The notes beneath the pieces are model-generated. The model worked only from the letters and a program-made list of their open reading frames with translations, searched no databases and was not told the DNA's origin. A stretch of 64,000 bases of DNA from sequence record PV472050.1. One strand, 5' to 3'. Shown here piece by piece: positions 1,135-57,415 of this stretch; within the stretch, counting starts at the first letter, position 1, and each line of letters opens with the position of its first letter. A program made the position numbers and the translations under genes.

Positions 1135-1180
1135 GGGGGAGTGAGCGTTTGCTCCCCCTGTTCCACTCTTTATTTTTTTT
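1135..1180 (+). terminator. probable intrinsic terminator
   Basis: GGGGGAG/CTCCCCC stem with a long T tract downstream. Confidence 0.55.
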
Positions 1181-1200
1181 TTCTAGAAGGGATACCACCA

Positions 1201-18559: not shown

Positions 18560-18616
18560 CTAACGGGTGGTGTTATGGTTATATCGGCGGTTACCCACCC
18601 GTTAGTCTTTTTTTTT
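18560..18616 (+). terminator. intrinsic terminator
   Basis: 11-bp stem CTAACGGGTGG/CCACCCGTTAG followed by T9. Confidence 0.7.
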
Positions 18617-52514: not shown

Positions 52515-53384
52515 ATGTCGACTAAACAACAACAGCGTCGGGTTAAGAAACTCAATAAGCGCAAGCAAGTGAGTAAGCAAAAACAACGGGCTAAGAACAT
52601 CCAGGAAGCTCACCTCCGCCAGGACTTTGGTAAAGGCTACCGGGGGGAGACCCTGAGTAAAGATGCCTTGTACGATAAGGTCAGGGGTGAAAACAAAGCC
52701 TTCTCGGTGCGCGACCTTATTAATAACCGTCAACGTCTGGCTGAGCTGGCTGAACAGATGAAGCTGACGGGTGATGAGGACATCCCTCAGCTCTTCAGTG
52801 GGGAAGAACTCCTCAATGCCATCAATGACATGATTACAGTCACCATTAAGCTCCACAGTGGGGTGATCGTGTACAACCGTCTGGTTGAAGAACGCCGCTT
52901 TGATATCAGTGAGGATGACCGTGCCTTACTGGAGAACTACGAACGCAAAGTGGTGGAGTTTGCGGAAGATGTCTCAGTCGTCACGACCCTGCATGAAGCG
53001 GGTCAACAACCCGAGGATTACTTTGAAGTCGTCCTTAACCTGGCTGATGTCATGGCGGCCCTCAGTGAGGAATTTGGGGAACCGGTTCTGGCTCTCATCA
53101 CCAAACGGGGTGATCTGATCGAAGCCTATGCCGTTGAACACAAACCTGAAGGACTGTCTGTCTACGATTACATGTGTCAACTTCACAGTGAACGTATTAC
53201 GGTTATCCAACAGCTGTACGGTGAGAGCCGGCTGAATGACGTCTTTAACGAATTGCACACCCTGGAGCAAGAACTCCCAGATTCCCCTGAAGAGATCCCG
53301 GGTGATAACCTCCCCTTCCCTGAGAAGGAAGAGGTCGGCGAATTCATCGCTATTTCCAACGATCCTGTCATTAACCCCCAGTAA
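52515..53384 (+). CDS. hypothetical protein with very basic N-terminus and acidic C-terminus
   Basis: KQQQRRVKKLNKRKQVSKQKQRAK; helical body. Confidence 0.75.
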   Translation: MSTKQQQRRVKKLNKRKQVSKQKQRAKNIQEAHLRQDFGKGYRGETLSKDALYDKVRGENKAFSVRDLINNRQRLAELAEQMKLTGDEDIPQLFSGEELLNAINDMITVTIKLHSGVIVYNRLVEERRFDISEDDRALLENYERKVVEFAEDVSVVTTLHEAGQQPEDYFEVVLNLADVMAALSEEFGEPVLALITKRGDLIEAYAVEHKPEGLSVYDYMCQLHSERITVIQQLYGESRLNDVFNELHTLEQELPDSPEEIPGDNLPFPEKEEVGEFIAISNDPVINPQ

Positions 53385-53396
53385 GGGACTGTTTGT

Positions 53397-55121
53397 ATGT
53401 CTGAGAATGTAACCCCGAACGAAAACCCTGAACTGACTCCCCCTTCGGAGTTGAGCAAAGCCGTTGAACAAACGATTCCCAAAACGGAGCCTTCCAGCCA
53501 CTTTGGCTTCATGGATACCCACACGCCTCAGAATACACCCATGAAGGAGGTGGTGGAGCCGCTCAACCCCATTACCAAAGAACTGGTTGAAGACGATCGA
53601 GCTAAGGGGTTCACCAGTATCTTCCTGGGGGTTGGTAAAGAAGAGAATGAGAAAGCGGCTGAACTGATTACCAACTGGAGTGCGTGGAACACGTTCAAAG
53701 AATTGAATAAGGTAGGGGAGGTTTCCCCAACGGTCTTTGCATCGGCTAAGCAAGACTGGGATGCCTTTGTTCAAGAGAACTACCCGGATGTGAATCCCAA
53801 TGAGTTGGAGAAGACCGCTAGTGATCTGTTCAAGTTCATGAACAGTCTTCAGGAGAACCTCCAACTTCGTACCCGCATGGTGCGGGAAGAGAATATTACC
53901 AACGCCTCGCGTAGGTGTGATAAACTCACCACGACCGATATCGTGGGTAAGACCCCGTCGGTGAATAAGAAAGGGTTGAGTATTGCAGATCGCATGATTC
54001 GCTCGACCATTCGTTCGTCGGGGGGTGTATACCAGTATAACCAACTGCTGCGTAATTCGTTCCTGAGTATTACGTGGGAACGTCCTCAGAAGCTGGAAGT
54101 CGCCGATCTCATCAACAACATTAACCGCCGTATTCGGGGGTATGTACGGCGGGTCGGTGGGAACGCCATGGCGTTGTCTTACATTGCGGGGTATATTGAG
54201 ATCTGGGATTGGTTGAAGCCCCGTTTGGTCAGCAGCAGTGTCAAAGGCCTGGCGGATTTCGATGACCTCAGCAAGGTGATCCGTATTACGGACATGCCGG
54301 TGATCTGTGCGGGTCTTTTGGCGTCGATTACGGATGACGGCGTCCAAATGGACCTCCGCTGTATGAACCCCAGCTGTGACTGGTATCAGTTCGATCTCAT
54401 CGATCCGACTAAGTTGGTGCAGCGCCGTCCGTCGATTGAGACCGATGAAGAGGCCGCTTTCTTTGGTAATATCTTCAGTGGGCGTGAACAACACACCGTT
54501 GATGAAATCCTCAAGATGATCGAACAGTCCACCTACGGGATGGACAATCGGTACGTGTACAACGAGGATCAATCCATTCGTCTGAAAGTAGGACCTCCCA
54601 GTCTGTCGGATGCCTTCGCTACCTTCGACTATTTCGTAGGGCGGGTAGATAAGCAGTTGGCGGATATTAGCAACAAGGTCAACACGGAACAAGACCTGGA
54701 AGAGCAACGTCTCCTTCTGCTTAACAGCTTGAGTGGGGCGGAGTACATGCACTGGGTGGAAGAGTTCGCTATTATGCCACCTCCGGGTGAAGACAGTGAA
54801 CCCCAGATCATTAAGCGGGCCAAGGAAGACCCTAACGAGTTCAACAAAGGCCTTATGGACTCCCTGCTGACCGATGAGGTGATGAATAAGAACTTGGTGT
54901 TGTTCGTCTACAATAAGGCGCCTTATCTGACCCGGACCTTTATTGGTGTCCGTAACTTCGTGTGTCCGAAGTGCGGTACGGAGTCGGATGCTCACCAAGA
55001 GGATCGTAAACTCGGGTATACCCCGATCGATGCCTTTATGAGTTTTTTTATCCATTCCCAGCTGATGTTGATGAATCTGGCGATGGAGCGTCAAAAGGTA
55101 AACAACGAAGCCCTCTCCTGA
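53397..55121 (+). CDS. putative tail/baseplate-hub assembly chaperone (574 aa)
   Basis: CMNPSC and CPKC Zn-ribbon-like pairs as in T4 gp26/gp51-type chaperones; slippery heptamer 24 codons before the stop. Confidence 0.5.
   Translation: MSENVTPNENPELTPPSELSKAVEQTIPKTEPSSHFGFMDTHTPQNTPMKEVVEPLNPITKELVEDDRAKGFTSIFLGVGKEENEKAAELITNWSAWNTFKELNKVGEVSPTVFASAKQDWDAFVQENYPDVNPNELEKTASDLFKFMNSLQENLQLRTRMVREENITNASRRCDKLTTTDIVGKTPSVNKKGLSIADRMIRSTIRSSGGVYQYNQLLRNSFLSITWERPQKLEVADLINNINRRIRGYVRRVGGNAMALSYIAGYIEIWDWLKPRLVSSSVKGLADFDDLSKVIRITDMPVICAGLLASITDDGVQMDLRCMNPSCDWYQFDLIDPTKLVQRRPSIETDEEAAFFGNIFSGREQHTVDEILKMIEQSTYGMDNRYVYNEDQSIRLKVGPPSLSDAFATFDYFVGRVDKQLADISNKVNTEQDLEEQRLLLLNSLSGAEYMHWVEEFAIMPPPGEDSEPQIIKRAKEDPNEFNKGLMDSLLTDEVMNKNLVLFVYNKAPYLTRTFIGVRNFVCPKCGTESDAHQEDRKLGYTPIDAFMSFFIHSQLMLMNLAMERQKVNNEALS
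55043..55049 (+). promoter_or_regulatory. candidate -1 ribosomal frameshift site T TTT TTT
   Basis: in-phase X XXY YYZ heptamer (AGT TTT TTT ATC); -1 frame open 55010-55591. Confidence 0.6.
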
Positions 55122-55216
55122 TTGGCGGTAAAGCGATTCACAATCCGGAGTTCTCGGCGGTTTACTTAAACCTCCAGAAGCAAGATCTCAGTGGTCTCAA
55201 GGAAGAGACTATCCTG

Positions 55217-55591
55217 TTGAACAACCAAGCGTTGCATGACATCAACATGGGATATGTCTCACCCCGTAATCTCCCCCCTCACCAATCGATTAAGTTCTTT
55301 CCGTCTGAAGTCCGGTATTACCACCCCTTCTCGTATGAGAGTATAGGAGAGTATTACGGGACTTTTCGGCTGGATGAATACCTGCCCTTAAAGGATTACT
55401 TGGAATTGCCCGCTAACTGTGCAGACACGTTGGTTAAGGCCGTTCAAAAGGGACGGGAAAAACGGTTGGCAATGGAGAAAGAACATCTGAAGGAAGAGGA
55501 AGAGAAACAGGCGAAGAGTGGGGGTAAACGAACCGCCTCGGAGTCGGTTTCTATGGATGCATTACTGGATCAATTGTCTAAACTTCGTTAA
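55217..55591 (+). CDS. chaperone GT-like C-terminal segment, probably reached by frameshift from the upstream gene
   Basis: only a TTG or SD-less ATG start; frame open 58 codons upstream to the slippery site; EYLPLKDYLELP...DTLV followed by a charged coil. Confidence 0.6.
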   Translation: MNNQALHDINMGYVSPRNLPPHQSIKFFPSEVRYYHPFSYESIGEYYGTFRLDEYLPLKDYLELPANCADTLVKAVQKGREKRLAMEKEHLKEEEEKQAKSGGKRTASESVSMDALLDQLSKLR

Positions 55592-55629: not shown

Positions 55630-55693
55630 TCTTATGACATACATGGTGACACCTCGTCTCTATACCGCTGTCCAACTGAAAAGGGCCCTCCTA

Positions 55694-56302
55694 ATGTCCA
55701 ACGATTACAAAGCACCTGAGGTCGCTGACCTCGGTAAGAAAGAAGAAAGTCCGAAGACCCAACCTACGCCTTCCATCCCCAATACGGTGGCTAAGGCTCA
55801 GGGTGCTAAATTCGAACCCGTACCTCTCCGTATTGGCATTGGCCAAATGGTCAATGGTAAAGGTAATGCGGTCACGGATATCATGAAAGAACGGATTGAC
55901 CGTCACCTGACCTACCTGGCCGGTAAGAAAGGCTTCACCAGTGATAGTGAACGGGAGGATGAACAAACCTCCTTTATCGAGATCATTGGTTCTACGCTGA
56001 CCCTTCCGTTTCCCCAGTACGTCATCGTTACTGACTACCTGTTGACGGTTATCCGGGAGAACCGGGAAATCTTTGCCAACGGTACAGCATTCCGCTTTAC
56101 CTACAAGCTCCGTAAGGAGTACCCGATAGAGAACGTTAAACTCTATCACACCTACATGACCTTCCTGACGTTCATCGCGGGTAACTGGGAAGCTCGTCAT
56201 CGCCTTAACCGCATCATTGATCTGGGAACGGCTATCCGCGATCTTCCTCGTAAGGGCAAAGAGAACGTCACCCAGTACTTCAATAAGCTGCAAAACGTTT
56301 GA
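55694..56302 (+). CDS. conserved phiKZ-like hypothetical protein (202 aa)
   Basis: ATG 55694 with AAAGGG upstream. Confidence 0.7.
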   Translation: MSNDYKAPEVADLGKKEESPKTQPTPSIPNTVAKAQGAKFEPVPLRIGIGQMVNGKGNAVTDIMKERIDRHLTYLAGKKGFTSDSEREDEQTSFIEIIGSTLTLPFPQYVIVTDYLLTVIRENREIFANGTAFRFTYKLRKEYPIENVKLYHTYMTFLTFIAGNWEARHRLNRIIDLGTAIRDLPRKGKENVTQYFNKLQNV

Positions 56303-56338
56303 TTTCCCTTTAGACTCTTTATCCAAGGAACGCTTCCA

Positions 56339-57415
56339 ATGGACAGTGTTGTACTTACCGAAGAAGACGGTAATGGTTATGAAATCCCGGATCTCCCTCA
56401 TATCGGGATTGTGTATGATGCGCTTAACGATACCCTGGATCAAGTGGATCGGGGTGTTGCAGGTACGGAAAGCCTGACCGCCTCCCAACAGTACCTGGTA
56501 GGCGTACTCGCTGCGAACCGACCCGGTTACTCGGTGACCGGTAACGAAGGTTTTATGGCCAATATCGGTGCGGGTCTTAAAGCCGCGTATGACTACGTGG
56601 TGAAGATGTTCAAGAGCCTCTGGGACTTCTTCTTTAAGCGTGATGTCTCTCAGAAGACCTCGGATGCTAAGAAGGAGATTGATGACCTCCAGACAAAACT
56701 GGAGGTGGTTCAGACCGGGGGTAAGACGGAAGCGGAAACCCAGGAAGCTCTGCACTCCATGAAGGTCCAGGTTAAGGAACAGGCACAATCTGGCTTTAAG
56801 ATCGACGGGGTAGACGCAGAAGAATGGCTGGAGAAAGAGACGAAGGCCTCTGCTACCCATGAAGAGAAGAAAGTCGCGGTTAAGACCCTGGCCCGAGAGC
56901 TTCCTAAGGTCAACACCCGGGGCAAGAAACGCCTCCAAGGTGTCATTGAACGGATGATCAAGACTCAGCAATATTTGGTCAGTGTGATTGATATCGCTGA
57001 AAAAGAAGCCCGGGAAACCCTGAATGAAAACCTGATGCGGGTAACGGACTCCATGAAACTCCTCCGCGCCAATGTTCATCAGTCTACCGAGCAACTGAGT
57101 CGAGTGAAAGACGTTAAAGACCTGACGGCTGTTCACAACGTCATGAACGGTGTTATTAAAGAGATCGATACCTTTAAGAATGCTGCTCAGGCTGTACAGA
57201 GTGTTCGCGGTAAGATGGGTGACATGATTAAGACCGTCGAACAGCAATTGGCTGAGGTGGCTAAAGGTGGAGGTGATACCAAAGCGACTCAAGCAGCGCT
57301 GGATGAACTCCGCAAGATCATGAACTTCCTGGTTAAATGCGGCAAATGCATTACCAACATCATTGAAGACAGTGTAAAGCTCCAGAAAGCCTTTAATGGT
57401 GTCTTCGGGCTGTAA
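56339..57415 (+). CDS. coiled-coil head/ejection protein with propeptide
   Basis: acidic N-terminus, G-N-E|GF protease-type site, amphipathic helix, coiled coils. Confidence 0.6.
   Translation: MDSVVLTEEDGNGYEIPDLPHIGIVYDALNDTLDQVDRGVAGTESLTASQQYLVGVLAANRPGYSVTGNEGFMANIGAGLKAAYDYVVKMFKSLWDFFFKRDVSQKTSDAKKEIDDLQTKLEVVQTGGKTEAETQEALHSMKVQVKEQAQSGFKIDGVDAEEWLEKETKASATHEEKKVAVKTLARELPKVNTRGKKRLQGVIERMIKTQQYLVSVIDIAEKEARETLNENLMRVTDSMKLLRANVHQSTEQLSRVKDVKDLTAVHNVMNGVIKEIDTFKNAAQAVQSVRGKMGDMIKTVEQQLAEVAKGGGDTKATQAALDELRKIMNFLVKCGKCITNIIEDSVKLQKAFNGVFGL

What the first reader, a model, noticed from the sequence alone, without database searches (positions are those of the whole stretch)
53397..55591. 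Candidate programmed -1 frameshift making short and long forms of a tail-chaperone-like protein
Seen: the 574-aa ORF reads ATG AGT TTT TTT ATC, placing an in-phase heptamer T TTT TTT at 55043-55049, 24 codons before its stop. The -1 frame is stop-free from 55010 to 55591, has no ATG/GTG for the first 58 codons after the heptamer, and runs into the track's 124-aa ORF, which has only a TTG start. An imperfect hairpin (CCATTCCCAG 55052 / CTGGCGATGG) follows. Slippage gives about 731 aa versus 574 aa. Established: lambda gpG/gpGT and P2 gpE/E+E' (TTTTTTG) tail chaperones use this layout. Inference: the CxxC pairs and the LPLKDYLELP...DTLV plus charged-coil ending suggest a T4 gp26/gp51- or GT-type chaperone. 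I know of no such frameshift described for phiKZ-like phages. No tape-measure gene is adjacent here.
Basis: partly seen in the sequence, partly recalled or inferred. Interest (0 to 1): 0.85.

Follow-up and report, generated by a model that had tools for sequence, protein, structure and literature searches.

The report
Conserved frameshift in jumbo-phage core gene
A run of seven T's near the end of a 574-residue gene of this phage EL-like genome is a slippery site, kept in 29 of 29 surveyed nucleus-forming jumbo phage lineages, that most likely lets some ribosomes slip back one base and add about 180 more residues, giving a short and a long form of a core protein of unknown (possibly tail-baseplate assembly) function.

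Summary
The window is a Pseudomonas phage EL-like genome. ORF A (53397-55121) is EL gp47 = phiKZ gp77 = Chimalliviridae core gene cg18. The downstream ORF is EL gp48.

T_TTT_TTT lies in phase at 55043-55049, and the -1 frame is open from 55010 to 55591. That frame has no start-type codon for 56 codons after the site.

In 29 lineages, down to about 22% protein identity, the downstream ORF is always in the -1 frame. There are no stops from the site to the called start, against 8.5% stops per codon in that frame upstream. 25 of 29 keep T_TTT_TTY in phase, and all 29 keep the A-site tetramer T_TTY. This holds although Phe is mostly TTC elsewhere in the gene. The start-less linker is conserved as protein.

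Function is open. There is no Pfam, NCBIfam or PDB match, and the protein is not annotated as a virion protein. The only lead is weak Foldseek similarity to T4-type baseplate hub assembly proteins; profile comparison with T4 gp26/gp51 aligns only a zinc knuckle. It is not a lambda G/GT family member.

Verdict: a real, apparently undescribed, family-wide -1 recoding site. The tail-chaperone role is unproven.

The parts
53397..55121 (+). Gene A, zero-frame product of 574 aa. It is EL gp47, phiKZ gp77, PhiPA3 gp074, Goslar gp081 and RAY gp267 (Chimalliviridae core gene cg18), in PHROG 4585.
   Evidence: AF2 model pLDDT 79, pTM 0.76.
54360..54377 (+). First conserved Cys pair (C322, C327; Cx4C).
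   Evidence: Invariant in 23 relatives.
54963..54977 (+). Second conserved Cys pair in a CPKCG knuckle (C523, C526). This is the only stretch that aligns with T4 gp26 and gp51.
55043..55049 (+). In-phase slippery heptamer T_TTT_TTT (codons Ser549 wobble, Phe550, Phe551).
   Evidence: Conserved as T_TTT_TTY in 25 of 29 lineages, and the tetramer T_TTY in 29 of 29. The motif class is efficient in E. coli (PMC4066793).
55049..55591 (+). -1-frame reading after the slip: 180 codons plus the stop. The frame itself is open from 55010.
   Evidence: The same piece is 154-189 codons with no stop in all 29 lineages.
55049..55121 (+). Dual-coding overlap. It holds the last 24 codons of gene A (a predicted C-terminal helix, 546-573) and the first 24 codons of the -1 piece.
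   Evidence: Both frames are conserved.
55122..55216 (+). So-called intergenic linker. It is open in the -1 frame, has no start-type codon, and is conserved as protein in relatives.
55217..55591 (+). Annotated downstream ORF B (EL gp48, 124 aa from TTG). The MIZ-Pa99 record starts it at ATG 55247. PHROG 19747.
55052..55087 (+).

Best explanation
Gene A and the ORF annotated after it form one recoded gene.

Most ribosomes read gene A in frame and finish the 574-aa protein, whose last 28 residues are predicted to be a C-terminal helix. At codons Phe550-Phe551 the two tRNA-Phe sit on UUU UUU, preceded by a U. A fraction of ribosomes slips one base backwards (programmed -1 ribosomal frameshift at U_UUU_UUU). 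Those ribosomes then read 180 further codons. The result is a 731-aa form in which the terminal helix is replaced by a proline- and charge-rich, predicted disordered linker, followed by the small helical gp48 domain and a charged tail.

Shown:
- the anatomy of the site;
- its family-wide conservation;
- selection on synonymous positions of the site;
- a linker that is kept open, evolves like coding sequence and has no start codon.

Inferred:
- that the slip is ribosomal rather than made by the RNA polymerase;
- that it needs no RNA stimulator, so its efficiency is probably low, as in lambda G/GT;
- that both forms are needed in a set ratio. No in-frame fusion was seen among the 150 relative clusters listed (of 153 found).

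Function, inferred at about 35-40%: a non-virion, zinc-binding assembly factor related in fold to T4-type baseplate hub assembly proteins. On this reading the extension tethers a second partner, in the way the T part of lambda gpGT does.

The confidence given (0.8) is for the recoding claim, not for the function.
For: 1. Site and frames in the window.
2. Downstream ORF in the -1 frame in 29 of 29 lineages. These span the EL group, 8 metagenomic relatives, RisingSun, FishSpeaker, Miami, Vibrio and Aeromonas phages, OBP, PhiPA3, phiKZ, SPN3US, Goslar, RAY, RSL2, PCH45, Noxifer, pVa-21, Centimanus, Kodama and sm033.
3. Stops: none from the site to the called start of B in any lineage (17-85 codons each). 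The same frame upstream in gene A carries 8.5% stops per codon (44 of 547 in the window). The joint probability is about 1e-53 if lineages are independent. In 14 of 29 lineages a -1-frame stop lies only 4-6 codons before the site, so the frame can only be entered there.
4. Codon choice: T_TTT_TTY in 25 of 29. The first site codon ends in T in 29 of 29, although TTC is the preferred Phe codon elsewhere in gene A (window 6 TTT to 18 TTC; two lineages 0 TTT). The product of expectations is 1e-19. The wobble base before the site is T in 25 of 29 (P = 2e-11).
5. tblastn with the -1 piece aligns from its first residue in RisingSun, FishSpeaker and the Miami group. Piece residues 1, 2 and 4 (Tyr, Pro, Pro) are invariant in 12 of 12.
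6. Linker: 28% pairwise identity, with the third codon position the most variable (0.56/0.50/0.67). There are 0 stops, against 26 and 40 in the other two frames.
7. Called starts of B fall anywhere from piece residue 27 to 67. No start codon is conserved, apart from an internal Met at about residue 67.
8. H_HH.U_UU.Y heptamers are among the most efficient -1 motifs in E. coli, and U_UU.C and U_UU.U are the next-best tetramers after A_AA.G (PMC4066793).
9. Function lead: Foldseek BFVD hits to 'baseplate hub assembly protein, T4-like' at E 8e-4 (prob 1.0, TM 0.48 on the target), and to the ACP17 hub assembly chaperone at E 0.046. Records that carry virion proteomics notes mark neighbours, but not gp47/gp48 or phiKZ gp77, as structural.
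Against: - No trans-frame product or -1-frame footprint has been observed; all evidence is comparative.
- No conserved stimulator was found: no shared downstream structure, single-sequence folds at z from -1.5 to +1.6, and no conserved Shine-Dalgarno-like block upstream in the alignment.
- Four lineages have weakened heptamers (G_TTT_TTT, C_TTT_TTT, G_TTT_TTC, A_CTT_TTT).
- In the window a TTG at 55217 has an AGGAAGAG-like stretch 9 nt upstream. In RAY an ATG lies in the -1 frame upstream of the site. Some independent initiation of B is therefore not excluded.
- The lineages are not fully independent, so the joint probabilities are overstated.
- For the function: no Pfam, NCBIfam or PDB match. 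hhalign to T4 gp26/gp51 covers only the zinc knuckle. There are no tail genes nearby.
Confidence: 0.8

Rival explanations
1. Transcriptional slippage. The phage (or host) RNA polymerase stutters on the T run, so a fraction of the mRNAs carries a run of different length. Ordinary translation of those mRNAs gives the same long protein.
For: - The site is a homopolymer of 5-8 T in every lineage.
- UUUUUUU is under-represented in E. coli genes, possibly because of such slippage (PMC4066793).
- These phages use their own unusual multisubunit RNA polymerases, whose slippage behaviour I could not assess.
- The lack of any RNA stimulator fits equally well.
Against: - What is conserved is the reading phase, not the run length. 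The site is always [N]_TTT_TTY in phase with gene A.
- Nine of 29 lineages have only T6 and two only T5. From general knowledge, such runs are short for efficient polymerase slippage.
Confidence: 0.12
2. Two ordinary genes. gp48 starts at its own start codon (TTG 55217 or ATG 55247 here). The T run only reflects a conserved Phe-Phe, and the open -1 frame is incidental.
For: - All public records annotate it this way.
- Phe-Phe is invariant in the protein.
- A start-type codon with a purine-rich stretch exists at 55217.
Against: - It does not explain TTT in 29 of 29 against a TTC preference, or the T before the site in 25 of 29.
- It does not explain the 29 of 29 -1-frame relation, the zero stops, protein conservation upstream of any start codon, or the scatter of called starts.
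Confidence: 0.05
3. Artefact or decay. A homopolymer sequencing error, or a recent frameshift mutation, split one longer gene.
For: Homopolymers are error-prone. One EL-like record (HHBS8_1) does carry one frameshift break elsewhere in gene A.
Against: - All 10 EL-like records match across this region; the two whose junction I read (window = MIZ-Pa99, and EL) have the identical T7 site, and the one length difference among the 10 (HHBS8_1) lies away from it.
- The same two-frame layout occurs in 29 lineages, sequenced independently and by different methods.
- The zero-frame tail after the site is itself conserved to its stop.
- No relative among the 150 clusters listed (of 153 found) has a single long in-frame version.
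Confidence: 0.01

Closest known systems
Lambda gpG/gpGT (and P2 gpE/E+E') tail assembly chaperones made by a -1 frameshift
   Same: - A -1 slip a few dozen codons before the stop of the upstream ORF.
- A long form that shares the N-terminal body and gains a new C-terminal domain.
- No strong RNA stimulator.
- Neither ORF is annotated as a virion protein.
- No in-frame fusion is seen, which suggests that a ratio of the two forms matters.
   Different: - The upstream protein is 574 aa, not about 100-150 aa.
- It does not lie between a tube gene and a tape-measure gene.
- A different heptamer.
- No sequence or fold match to tail assembly chaperone families: no Pfam hit, and Foldseek hits to 'tail assembly chaperone' only at E > 1.
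T4 gp26 and gp51, baseplate hub assembly chaperones (PMC3004832)
   Same: - Foldseek similarity of the gene A model to T4-type hub assembly proteins.
- A CPxCG zinc knuckle, which in gp26 also lies near the C-terminus.
- gp51 is absent from the virion.
- T4 gene 26 also yields two nested products, 26 and 26'.
   Different: - T4 makes its second product by internal initiation, not by frameshift.
- The T4 proteins are 208 and 249 aa and sit beside the hub and tape-measure genes.
- Profile comparison shows no homology beyond the knuckle.
- No Pfam hit.
Bacterial -1 frameshift sites of the IS3/IS1 OrfA-OrfAB type and dnaX
   Same: An X_XXY_YYZ heptamer read by re-pairing tRNAs. U_UU.U_UU.C is one of the motifs used by IS elements. 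The output is two products from one locus.
   Different: IS3 and dnaX use downstream structures and/or an upstream Shine-Dalgarno-like stimulator, and none is found here. dnaX gives a shorter product, not a longer one.

Membership tests
Programmed -1 ribosomal frameshift site (X_XXY_YYZ type) | Slippery heptamer in the zero-frame phase that allows both tRNAs to re-pair | tested here: met
   T_TTT_TTT at 55043-55049 in phase. It belongs to the efficient H_HH.U_UU.Y class.
Programmed -1 ribosomal frameshift site (X_XXY_YYZ type) | Open -1 frame from the site into a conserved downstream coding region | tested here: met
   Open from 55010 to 55591. No stops in 29 of 29 lineages, against 8.5% per codon upstream.
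Programmed -1 ribosomal frameshift site (X_XXY_YYZ type) | Site and frame relation conserved among orthologues beyond what the protein sequence requires | tested here: met
   Synonymous positions fixed: position 4 is T in 29 of 29 and position 1 is T in 25 of 29, despite a TTC preference.
Programmed -1 ribosomal frameshift site (X_XXY_YYZ type) | Stimulatory element (downstream hairpin or pseudoknot, or an upstream Shine-Dalgarno-like sequence). This is common but not obligatory. | tested here: not met
   No consensus structure. Folds are no better than shuffles.
Programmed -1 ribosomal frameshift site (X_XXY_YYZ type) | Trans-frame protein observed | not testable with these tools
   This needs proteomics or ribosome profiling of infected cells.
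Lambda G/GT-type tail assembly chaperone | Gene pair located between the major tail (tube) gene and the tape-measure gene | tested here: not met
   The neighbours are an RNA polymerase subunit, the gp45/gp46 homologues, gp49/gp50 and DNA polymerase. The synteny is the same in relatives.
Lambda G/GT-type tail assembly chaperone | Sequence or fold membership of a tail assembly chaperone family | tested here: not met
   No Pfam, NCBIfam or PHROG functional hit. Foldseek hits to tail assembly chaperones only at E > 1.
Lambda G/GT-type tail assembly chaperone | Short and frameshift-extended forms sharing the N-terminal part | tested here: met
   The layout is met at the sequence level. The products themselves have not been observed.
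T4 gp26/gp51 baseplate hub assembly proteins | Sequence homology (Pfam or profile-profile) to gp26 or gp51 | tested here: not met
   No Pfam hit. hhalign of a 162-sequence profile against the gp51 and gp26 alignments aligns only 14-16 columns, at probability 65% and 46%.
T4 gp26/gp51 baseplate hub assembly proteins | Shared fold | tested here: inconclusive
   Foldseek BFVD gives E 8e-4 (prob 1.0, TM 0.48 on the target), 2.9e-3, 0.046 and 0.49 to T4-type hub assembly or hub proteins. These targets are predicted models with transferred names, and no solved structure matched.
T4 gp26/gp51 baseplate hub assembly proteins | Required for hub assembly and absent from the virion | not testable with these tools
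   Indirect only. gp47/gp48, phiKZ gp77 and OBP_093/094 carry no virion note in records whose neighbours do.

The most novel reading that the evidence does not exclude
All nucleus-forming jumbo phages (Chimalliviridae) use a stimulator-free -1 frameshift in core gene cg18 (phiKZ gp77) to make a fixed ratio of two forms of a zinc-binding, non-virion assembly factor. That factor is a distant structural relative of the T4 gp26/gp51 hub chaperones. On this reading it is the functional counterpart of lambda G/GT for the giant contractile tail, moved away from the tail genes, and the separately annotated small gene downstream has no independent existence.
Probability: 0.3. Interest if true: 0.8.

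Novelty: new member of a known kind. Interest (0 to 1): 0.68.

Why it matters
The gene is one of the roughly 70 core genes shared by all nucleus-forming jumbo phages and has no known function. These phages include phage-therapy candidates and cell-biology models.

If the frameshift is real:
- every public annotation inspected of this locus is incomplete (22 records; tblastn finds the gene in about 240 phage records);
- a 'hypothetical' small gene is really the C-terminal domain of a larger isoform;
- the family gains its first recoding event;
- searches for the function of cg18 can be aimed at a two-isoform, ratio-dependent assembly role.

It would also be a clean natural case of a U_UUU_UUY site that works without a recognisable RNA stimulator, conserved over very deep divergence.

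Tried and rejected
- Pfam, NCBIfam and PHROG scans of both parts, of 23 relatives and of 10 distant relatives gave only unnamed PHROGs (4585, 8054, 19747, 24181) and sub-threshold zinc-finger noise.
- Foldseek of the gene A model against the PDB gave nothing (best E 1.8).
- The AF2 model of the -1 piece was poor (pLDDT 65, pTM 0.38). Foldseek returned only its own orthologues.
- Single-sequence word search with the -1 piece found only the EL-type gp48. A profile query was needed.
- hhalign against T4 gp26/gp51, with a narrow and then a broad profile, aligned only the zinc knuckle.
- RNAalifold and single-sequence folds found no stimulator.
- I suspected that the 686-aa phiEaH2/SPN3US-type relatives might be natural in-frame fusions. 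This is rejected: their extra length is N-terminal, and they too end shortly after the site.
- The 'ZipA-like cell division protein' label on some relatives has no support in any scan.
- The Goslar 'gp77' capsid decorator of a 2026 preprint is a numbering coincidence.
- Literature searches for a described frameshift, or for a function of phiKZ gp77, SPN3US gp39 or 201phi2-1 gp136, found nothing relevant.
Full report
**Identity of the locus**

The window is 100% identical over this region to Pseudomonas phage MIZ-Pa99 and 98.4% identical to phage EL.
- ORF A (53397-55121, 574 aa) is EL gp47.
- The next ORF (55217-55591 from TTG, or 55247 from ATG in the MIZ-Pa99 record) is EL gp48.
- Notes in the PhiPA3 record, and the supplement of the Chimalliviridae core-genome paper, equate gp47 with phiKZ gp77, PhiPA3 gp074, 201phi2-1 gp136, Goslar gp081 and RAY gp267. 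This is core gene cg18, listed as 'hypothetical protein'.
- tblastn finds the gene in about 240 phage records.
- The neighbours are conserved. Upstream on the other strand lie a virion RNA polymerase subunit and the phiKZ gp79 homologue, then the gp78 homologue. Downstream lie two small genes and DNA polymerase.

**Check of the observation**

- The codons read ATG AGT TTT TTT ATC, so T_TTT_TTT at 55043-55049 is in the X_XXY_YYZ phase, 24 codons before the stop.
- The -1 frame is open from 55010 to 55591.
- After the site its first start-type codon is TTG at codon 57 and its first ATG is codon 67.
- The products would be 574 aa and 551+180 = 731 aa.
- T7 is rare here: three places in 64 kb, against 14.5 matches expected. 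The other two runs sit at gene boundaries.
The 76 nt after the site fold no better than shuffles (z = +0.64), as do 11 relatives (z from -1.5 to +1.6). RNAalifold predicts no shared pair in 12 relatives.

**Comparative evidence**

I read the junction in 29 lineages:
- the window;
- eight metagenomic relatives at 41-57% identity;
- RisingSun, FishSpeaker, Miami, two Vibrio phages, two Aeromonas phages, OBP and PhiPA3;
- phiKZ, SPN3US, Goslar, RAY, RSL2, PCH45, Noxifer, pVa-21, Centimanus, Kodama and sm033.

In 29 of 29 the downstream ORF is in the -1 frame of gene A. The -1 reading from the site to the stop of B is 154-189 codons with no stop.

The site itself:
- It is T_TTT_TTT or T_TTT_TTC, in phase, in 25 of 29.
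- The four exceptions are G_TTT_TTT, C_TTT_TTT, G_TTT_TTC and A_CTT_TTT. All four still keep the A-site tetramer T_TTY.
- Phe-Phe is invariant in the protein, but that does not explain the nucleotides. Elsewhere in gene A, Phe is mostly TTC (window 6 TTT to 18 TTC; two lineages have no other TTT at all).
- Even so, the first site codon ends in T in 29 of 29 (product of expectations 1e-19). The wobble base of the preceding, variable codon (Ser, Thr, Ala, Asn, Leu, Val, Gly or Tyr) is T in 25 of 29 (P = 2e-11).

The open frame:
- In the -1 frame, gene A upstream of the site carries 8.5% stops per codon (44 of 547 in the window).
- From the site to the called start of B there is no stop in any lineage. 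This covers 17-85 codons each, and phiKZ alone has 85 codons at a background of 18% per codon. The joint probability is about 1e-53.
- In 14 of 29 lineages a -1-frame stop lies 4-6 codons before the site. That leaves only this short interval for entering the frame.
- These probabilities assume independent lineages and are therefore overstated. At 22-57% protein identity, however, synonymous sites are saturated between most of them.

**The linker is translated**

- tblastn with the -1 piece alone aligns from its first residue in RisingSun/Joad, FishSpeaker and the Miami group. It overlaps the end of the gene A match in the -1 frame.
- In a 12-sequence alignment, piece residues 1, 2 and 4 (Tyr, Pro, Pro) and residues 20 and 23 are invariant.
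- The stretch after the gene A stop and before any start-type codon of the window (residues 25-56) shows 28% pairwise identity. The gp48 core shows 40% and the tail 22%.
- In that stretch the third codon position is the most variable (0.56/0.50/0.67). It has no stops, against 26 and 40 in the other two frames.
- Gene callers and annotators place the start of B anywhere from residue 27 to 67, on ATG, GTG, TTG or even CTG. The only conserved ATG is an internal Met near residue 67.

**Mechanism**

- According to the E. coli motif survey (PMC4066793), H_HH.U_UU.Y heptamers are among the most efficient -1 motifs.
- Both U_UU.U_UU.U and U_UU.U_UU.C shift above background without a stimulator and are under-represented in genes.
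- U_UU.C and U_UU.U are the next most shift-prone tetramers after A_AA.G. That accounts for the four weakened sites.
- The phase, rather than the run length (5-8 T), is what is conserved. The last base is restricted to T or C, the two Phe codons. Both points favour ribosomal slippage over polymerase stuttering. The latter is not excluded, because these phages use their own RNA polymerases.
- No stimulator was found, so I expect a low efficiency. This is an inference.

**What the two forms look like**

- The AF2 model of gene A is confident (pLDDT 79, pTM 0.76). It ends in a helix at 546-573, so the slip at 550-551 swaps that helix.
- The -1 piece is predicted disordered for its first 37 residues or so, helical at 85-156 (pLDDT 78-90), and ends in a charged segment.
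- Among the 150 representative clusters listed (of 153 found), none is a single long in-frame version. The 630-668 aa relatives (PHROG 8054, SPN3US type) are longer at the N-terminus. This fits a need for both forms.

**Function**

- Nothing was found in Pfam, NCBIfam or the PDB.
- Against predicted viral structures, the gene's own family comes first. After it come proteins named baseplate hub assembly protein (T4-like, E 8e-4, prob 1.0), hub assembly chaperone (ACP17, E 0.046), hub subunit (SP-15, E 0.49) and gp51-like (CP21, E 2.5).
- I fetched T4 genes 26 and 51. The accession was confirmed in papers; the locus came.
- hhalign, even with a 162-sequence profile (Neff 7.8) against small gp51 and gp26 alignments, aligns only the CPxCG knuckle. 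T4-type membership is therefore not shown.
- T4 gp26 and gp51 are listed as hub assembly chaperones in PMC3004832, which says gp51 is absent from the particle while genetic studies place gp26 in the hub. T4 gene 26 also has a nested second product.
- Records with proteomics-derived notes mark neighbours, but not this gene pair, as virion proteins.
- The Goslar structure preprint does not mention gp81 or gp82 in its main text.
- I rate an assembly-chaperone role at about 35-40%. A role in replication or transcription, suggested by the neighbourhood and the zinc site, remains open.

**Novelty**

Searches of the full-text library returned no paper describing this site or a function for the gene. 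They combined frameshift terms with phiKZ, jumbo, Chimalliviridae and the gene names. None of the 22 public records I inspected annotates a joined CDS here.

The kind of mechanism is well known. This instance, its gene family and its family-wide conservation appear to be new.

**Rule compliance**

- No string joining the two frames was built. All queries ended at the site.
- The trans-frame peptides quoted in the finding were not used.
- One EL-like record (HHBS8_1) has gene A broken once by a frameshift away from the site. Its place is not given.

Noticed in passing
window 55634-57415: The MIZ-Pa99 record annotates a minus-strand CDS (55691-57079) and a short plus-strand CDS (56954-57415). 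Phage EL has gp49 and gp50 on the plus strand at the same place. PHROG hits (E 1e-73 and 6e-135) support the plus-strand ORFs 55634-56302 and 56339-57415.
   Followed up: partly
whole window (record PV472050): The MIZ-Pa99 record's taxonomy line places it in Straboviridae, although it is 98-100% identical to Elvirus EL.
   Followed up: no
window 1173-1182 and 18608-18616: A T10 run and a T9 run are the only other runs of seven or more T in the window. There is no A7 run on this strand. Both sit at gene boundaries, just upstream of the next plus-strand ORF, and may be terminator or promoter features.
   Followed up: partly
window 52974-55094, minus strand: A 706-aa ORF lies antisense to gene A. 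It has no annotation in any record and was not searched. It is probably a shadow of codon bias.
   Followed up: no
L031 (Pseudomonas phage HHBS8_1): In this EL-like record gene A is split into two CDS by one frameshift away from the slippery site. This may be a sequencing error or a real defect.
   Followed up: partly
L023 (Erwinia phage RAY) 3036-3584: The RAY record starts gp266 at an ATG in the -1 frame upstream of the slippery site, overlapping gp267 by 136 nt. This is the one lineage seen where an independent upstream start is formally possible.
   Followed up: partly
window about 55105-55118 and the same place in relatives (alignment A2, columns about 78-90): The nucleotides just before the gene A stop are unusually conserved in the EL clade. 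Both frames encode conserved residues there. Whether the block has a further role, for instance in termination or in shift efficiency, is unexplained.
   Followed up: no
L032 (phage T4) 10803-11429: T4 gene 26 is annotated with a nested second product, 26', from an internal start. So a hub-assembly gene in T4 also makes two forms, by a different route.
   Followed up: no
Pseudomonas phage vB_PQ1 record (PQ516283): Gene A matches in two pieces and three places, with only 61-82% coverage, in a 184-kb record. This suggests an assembly rearrangement or a deletion in that record.
   Followed up: no
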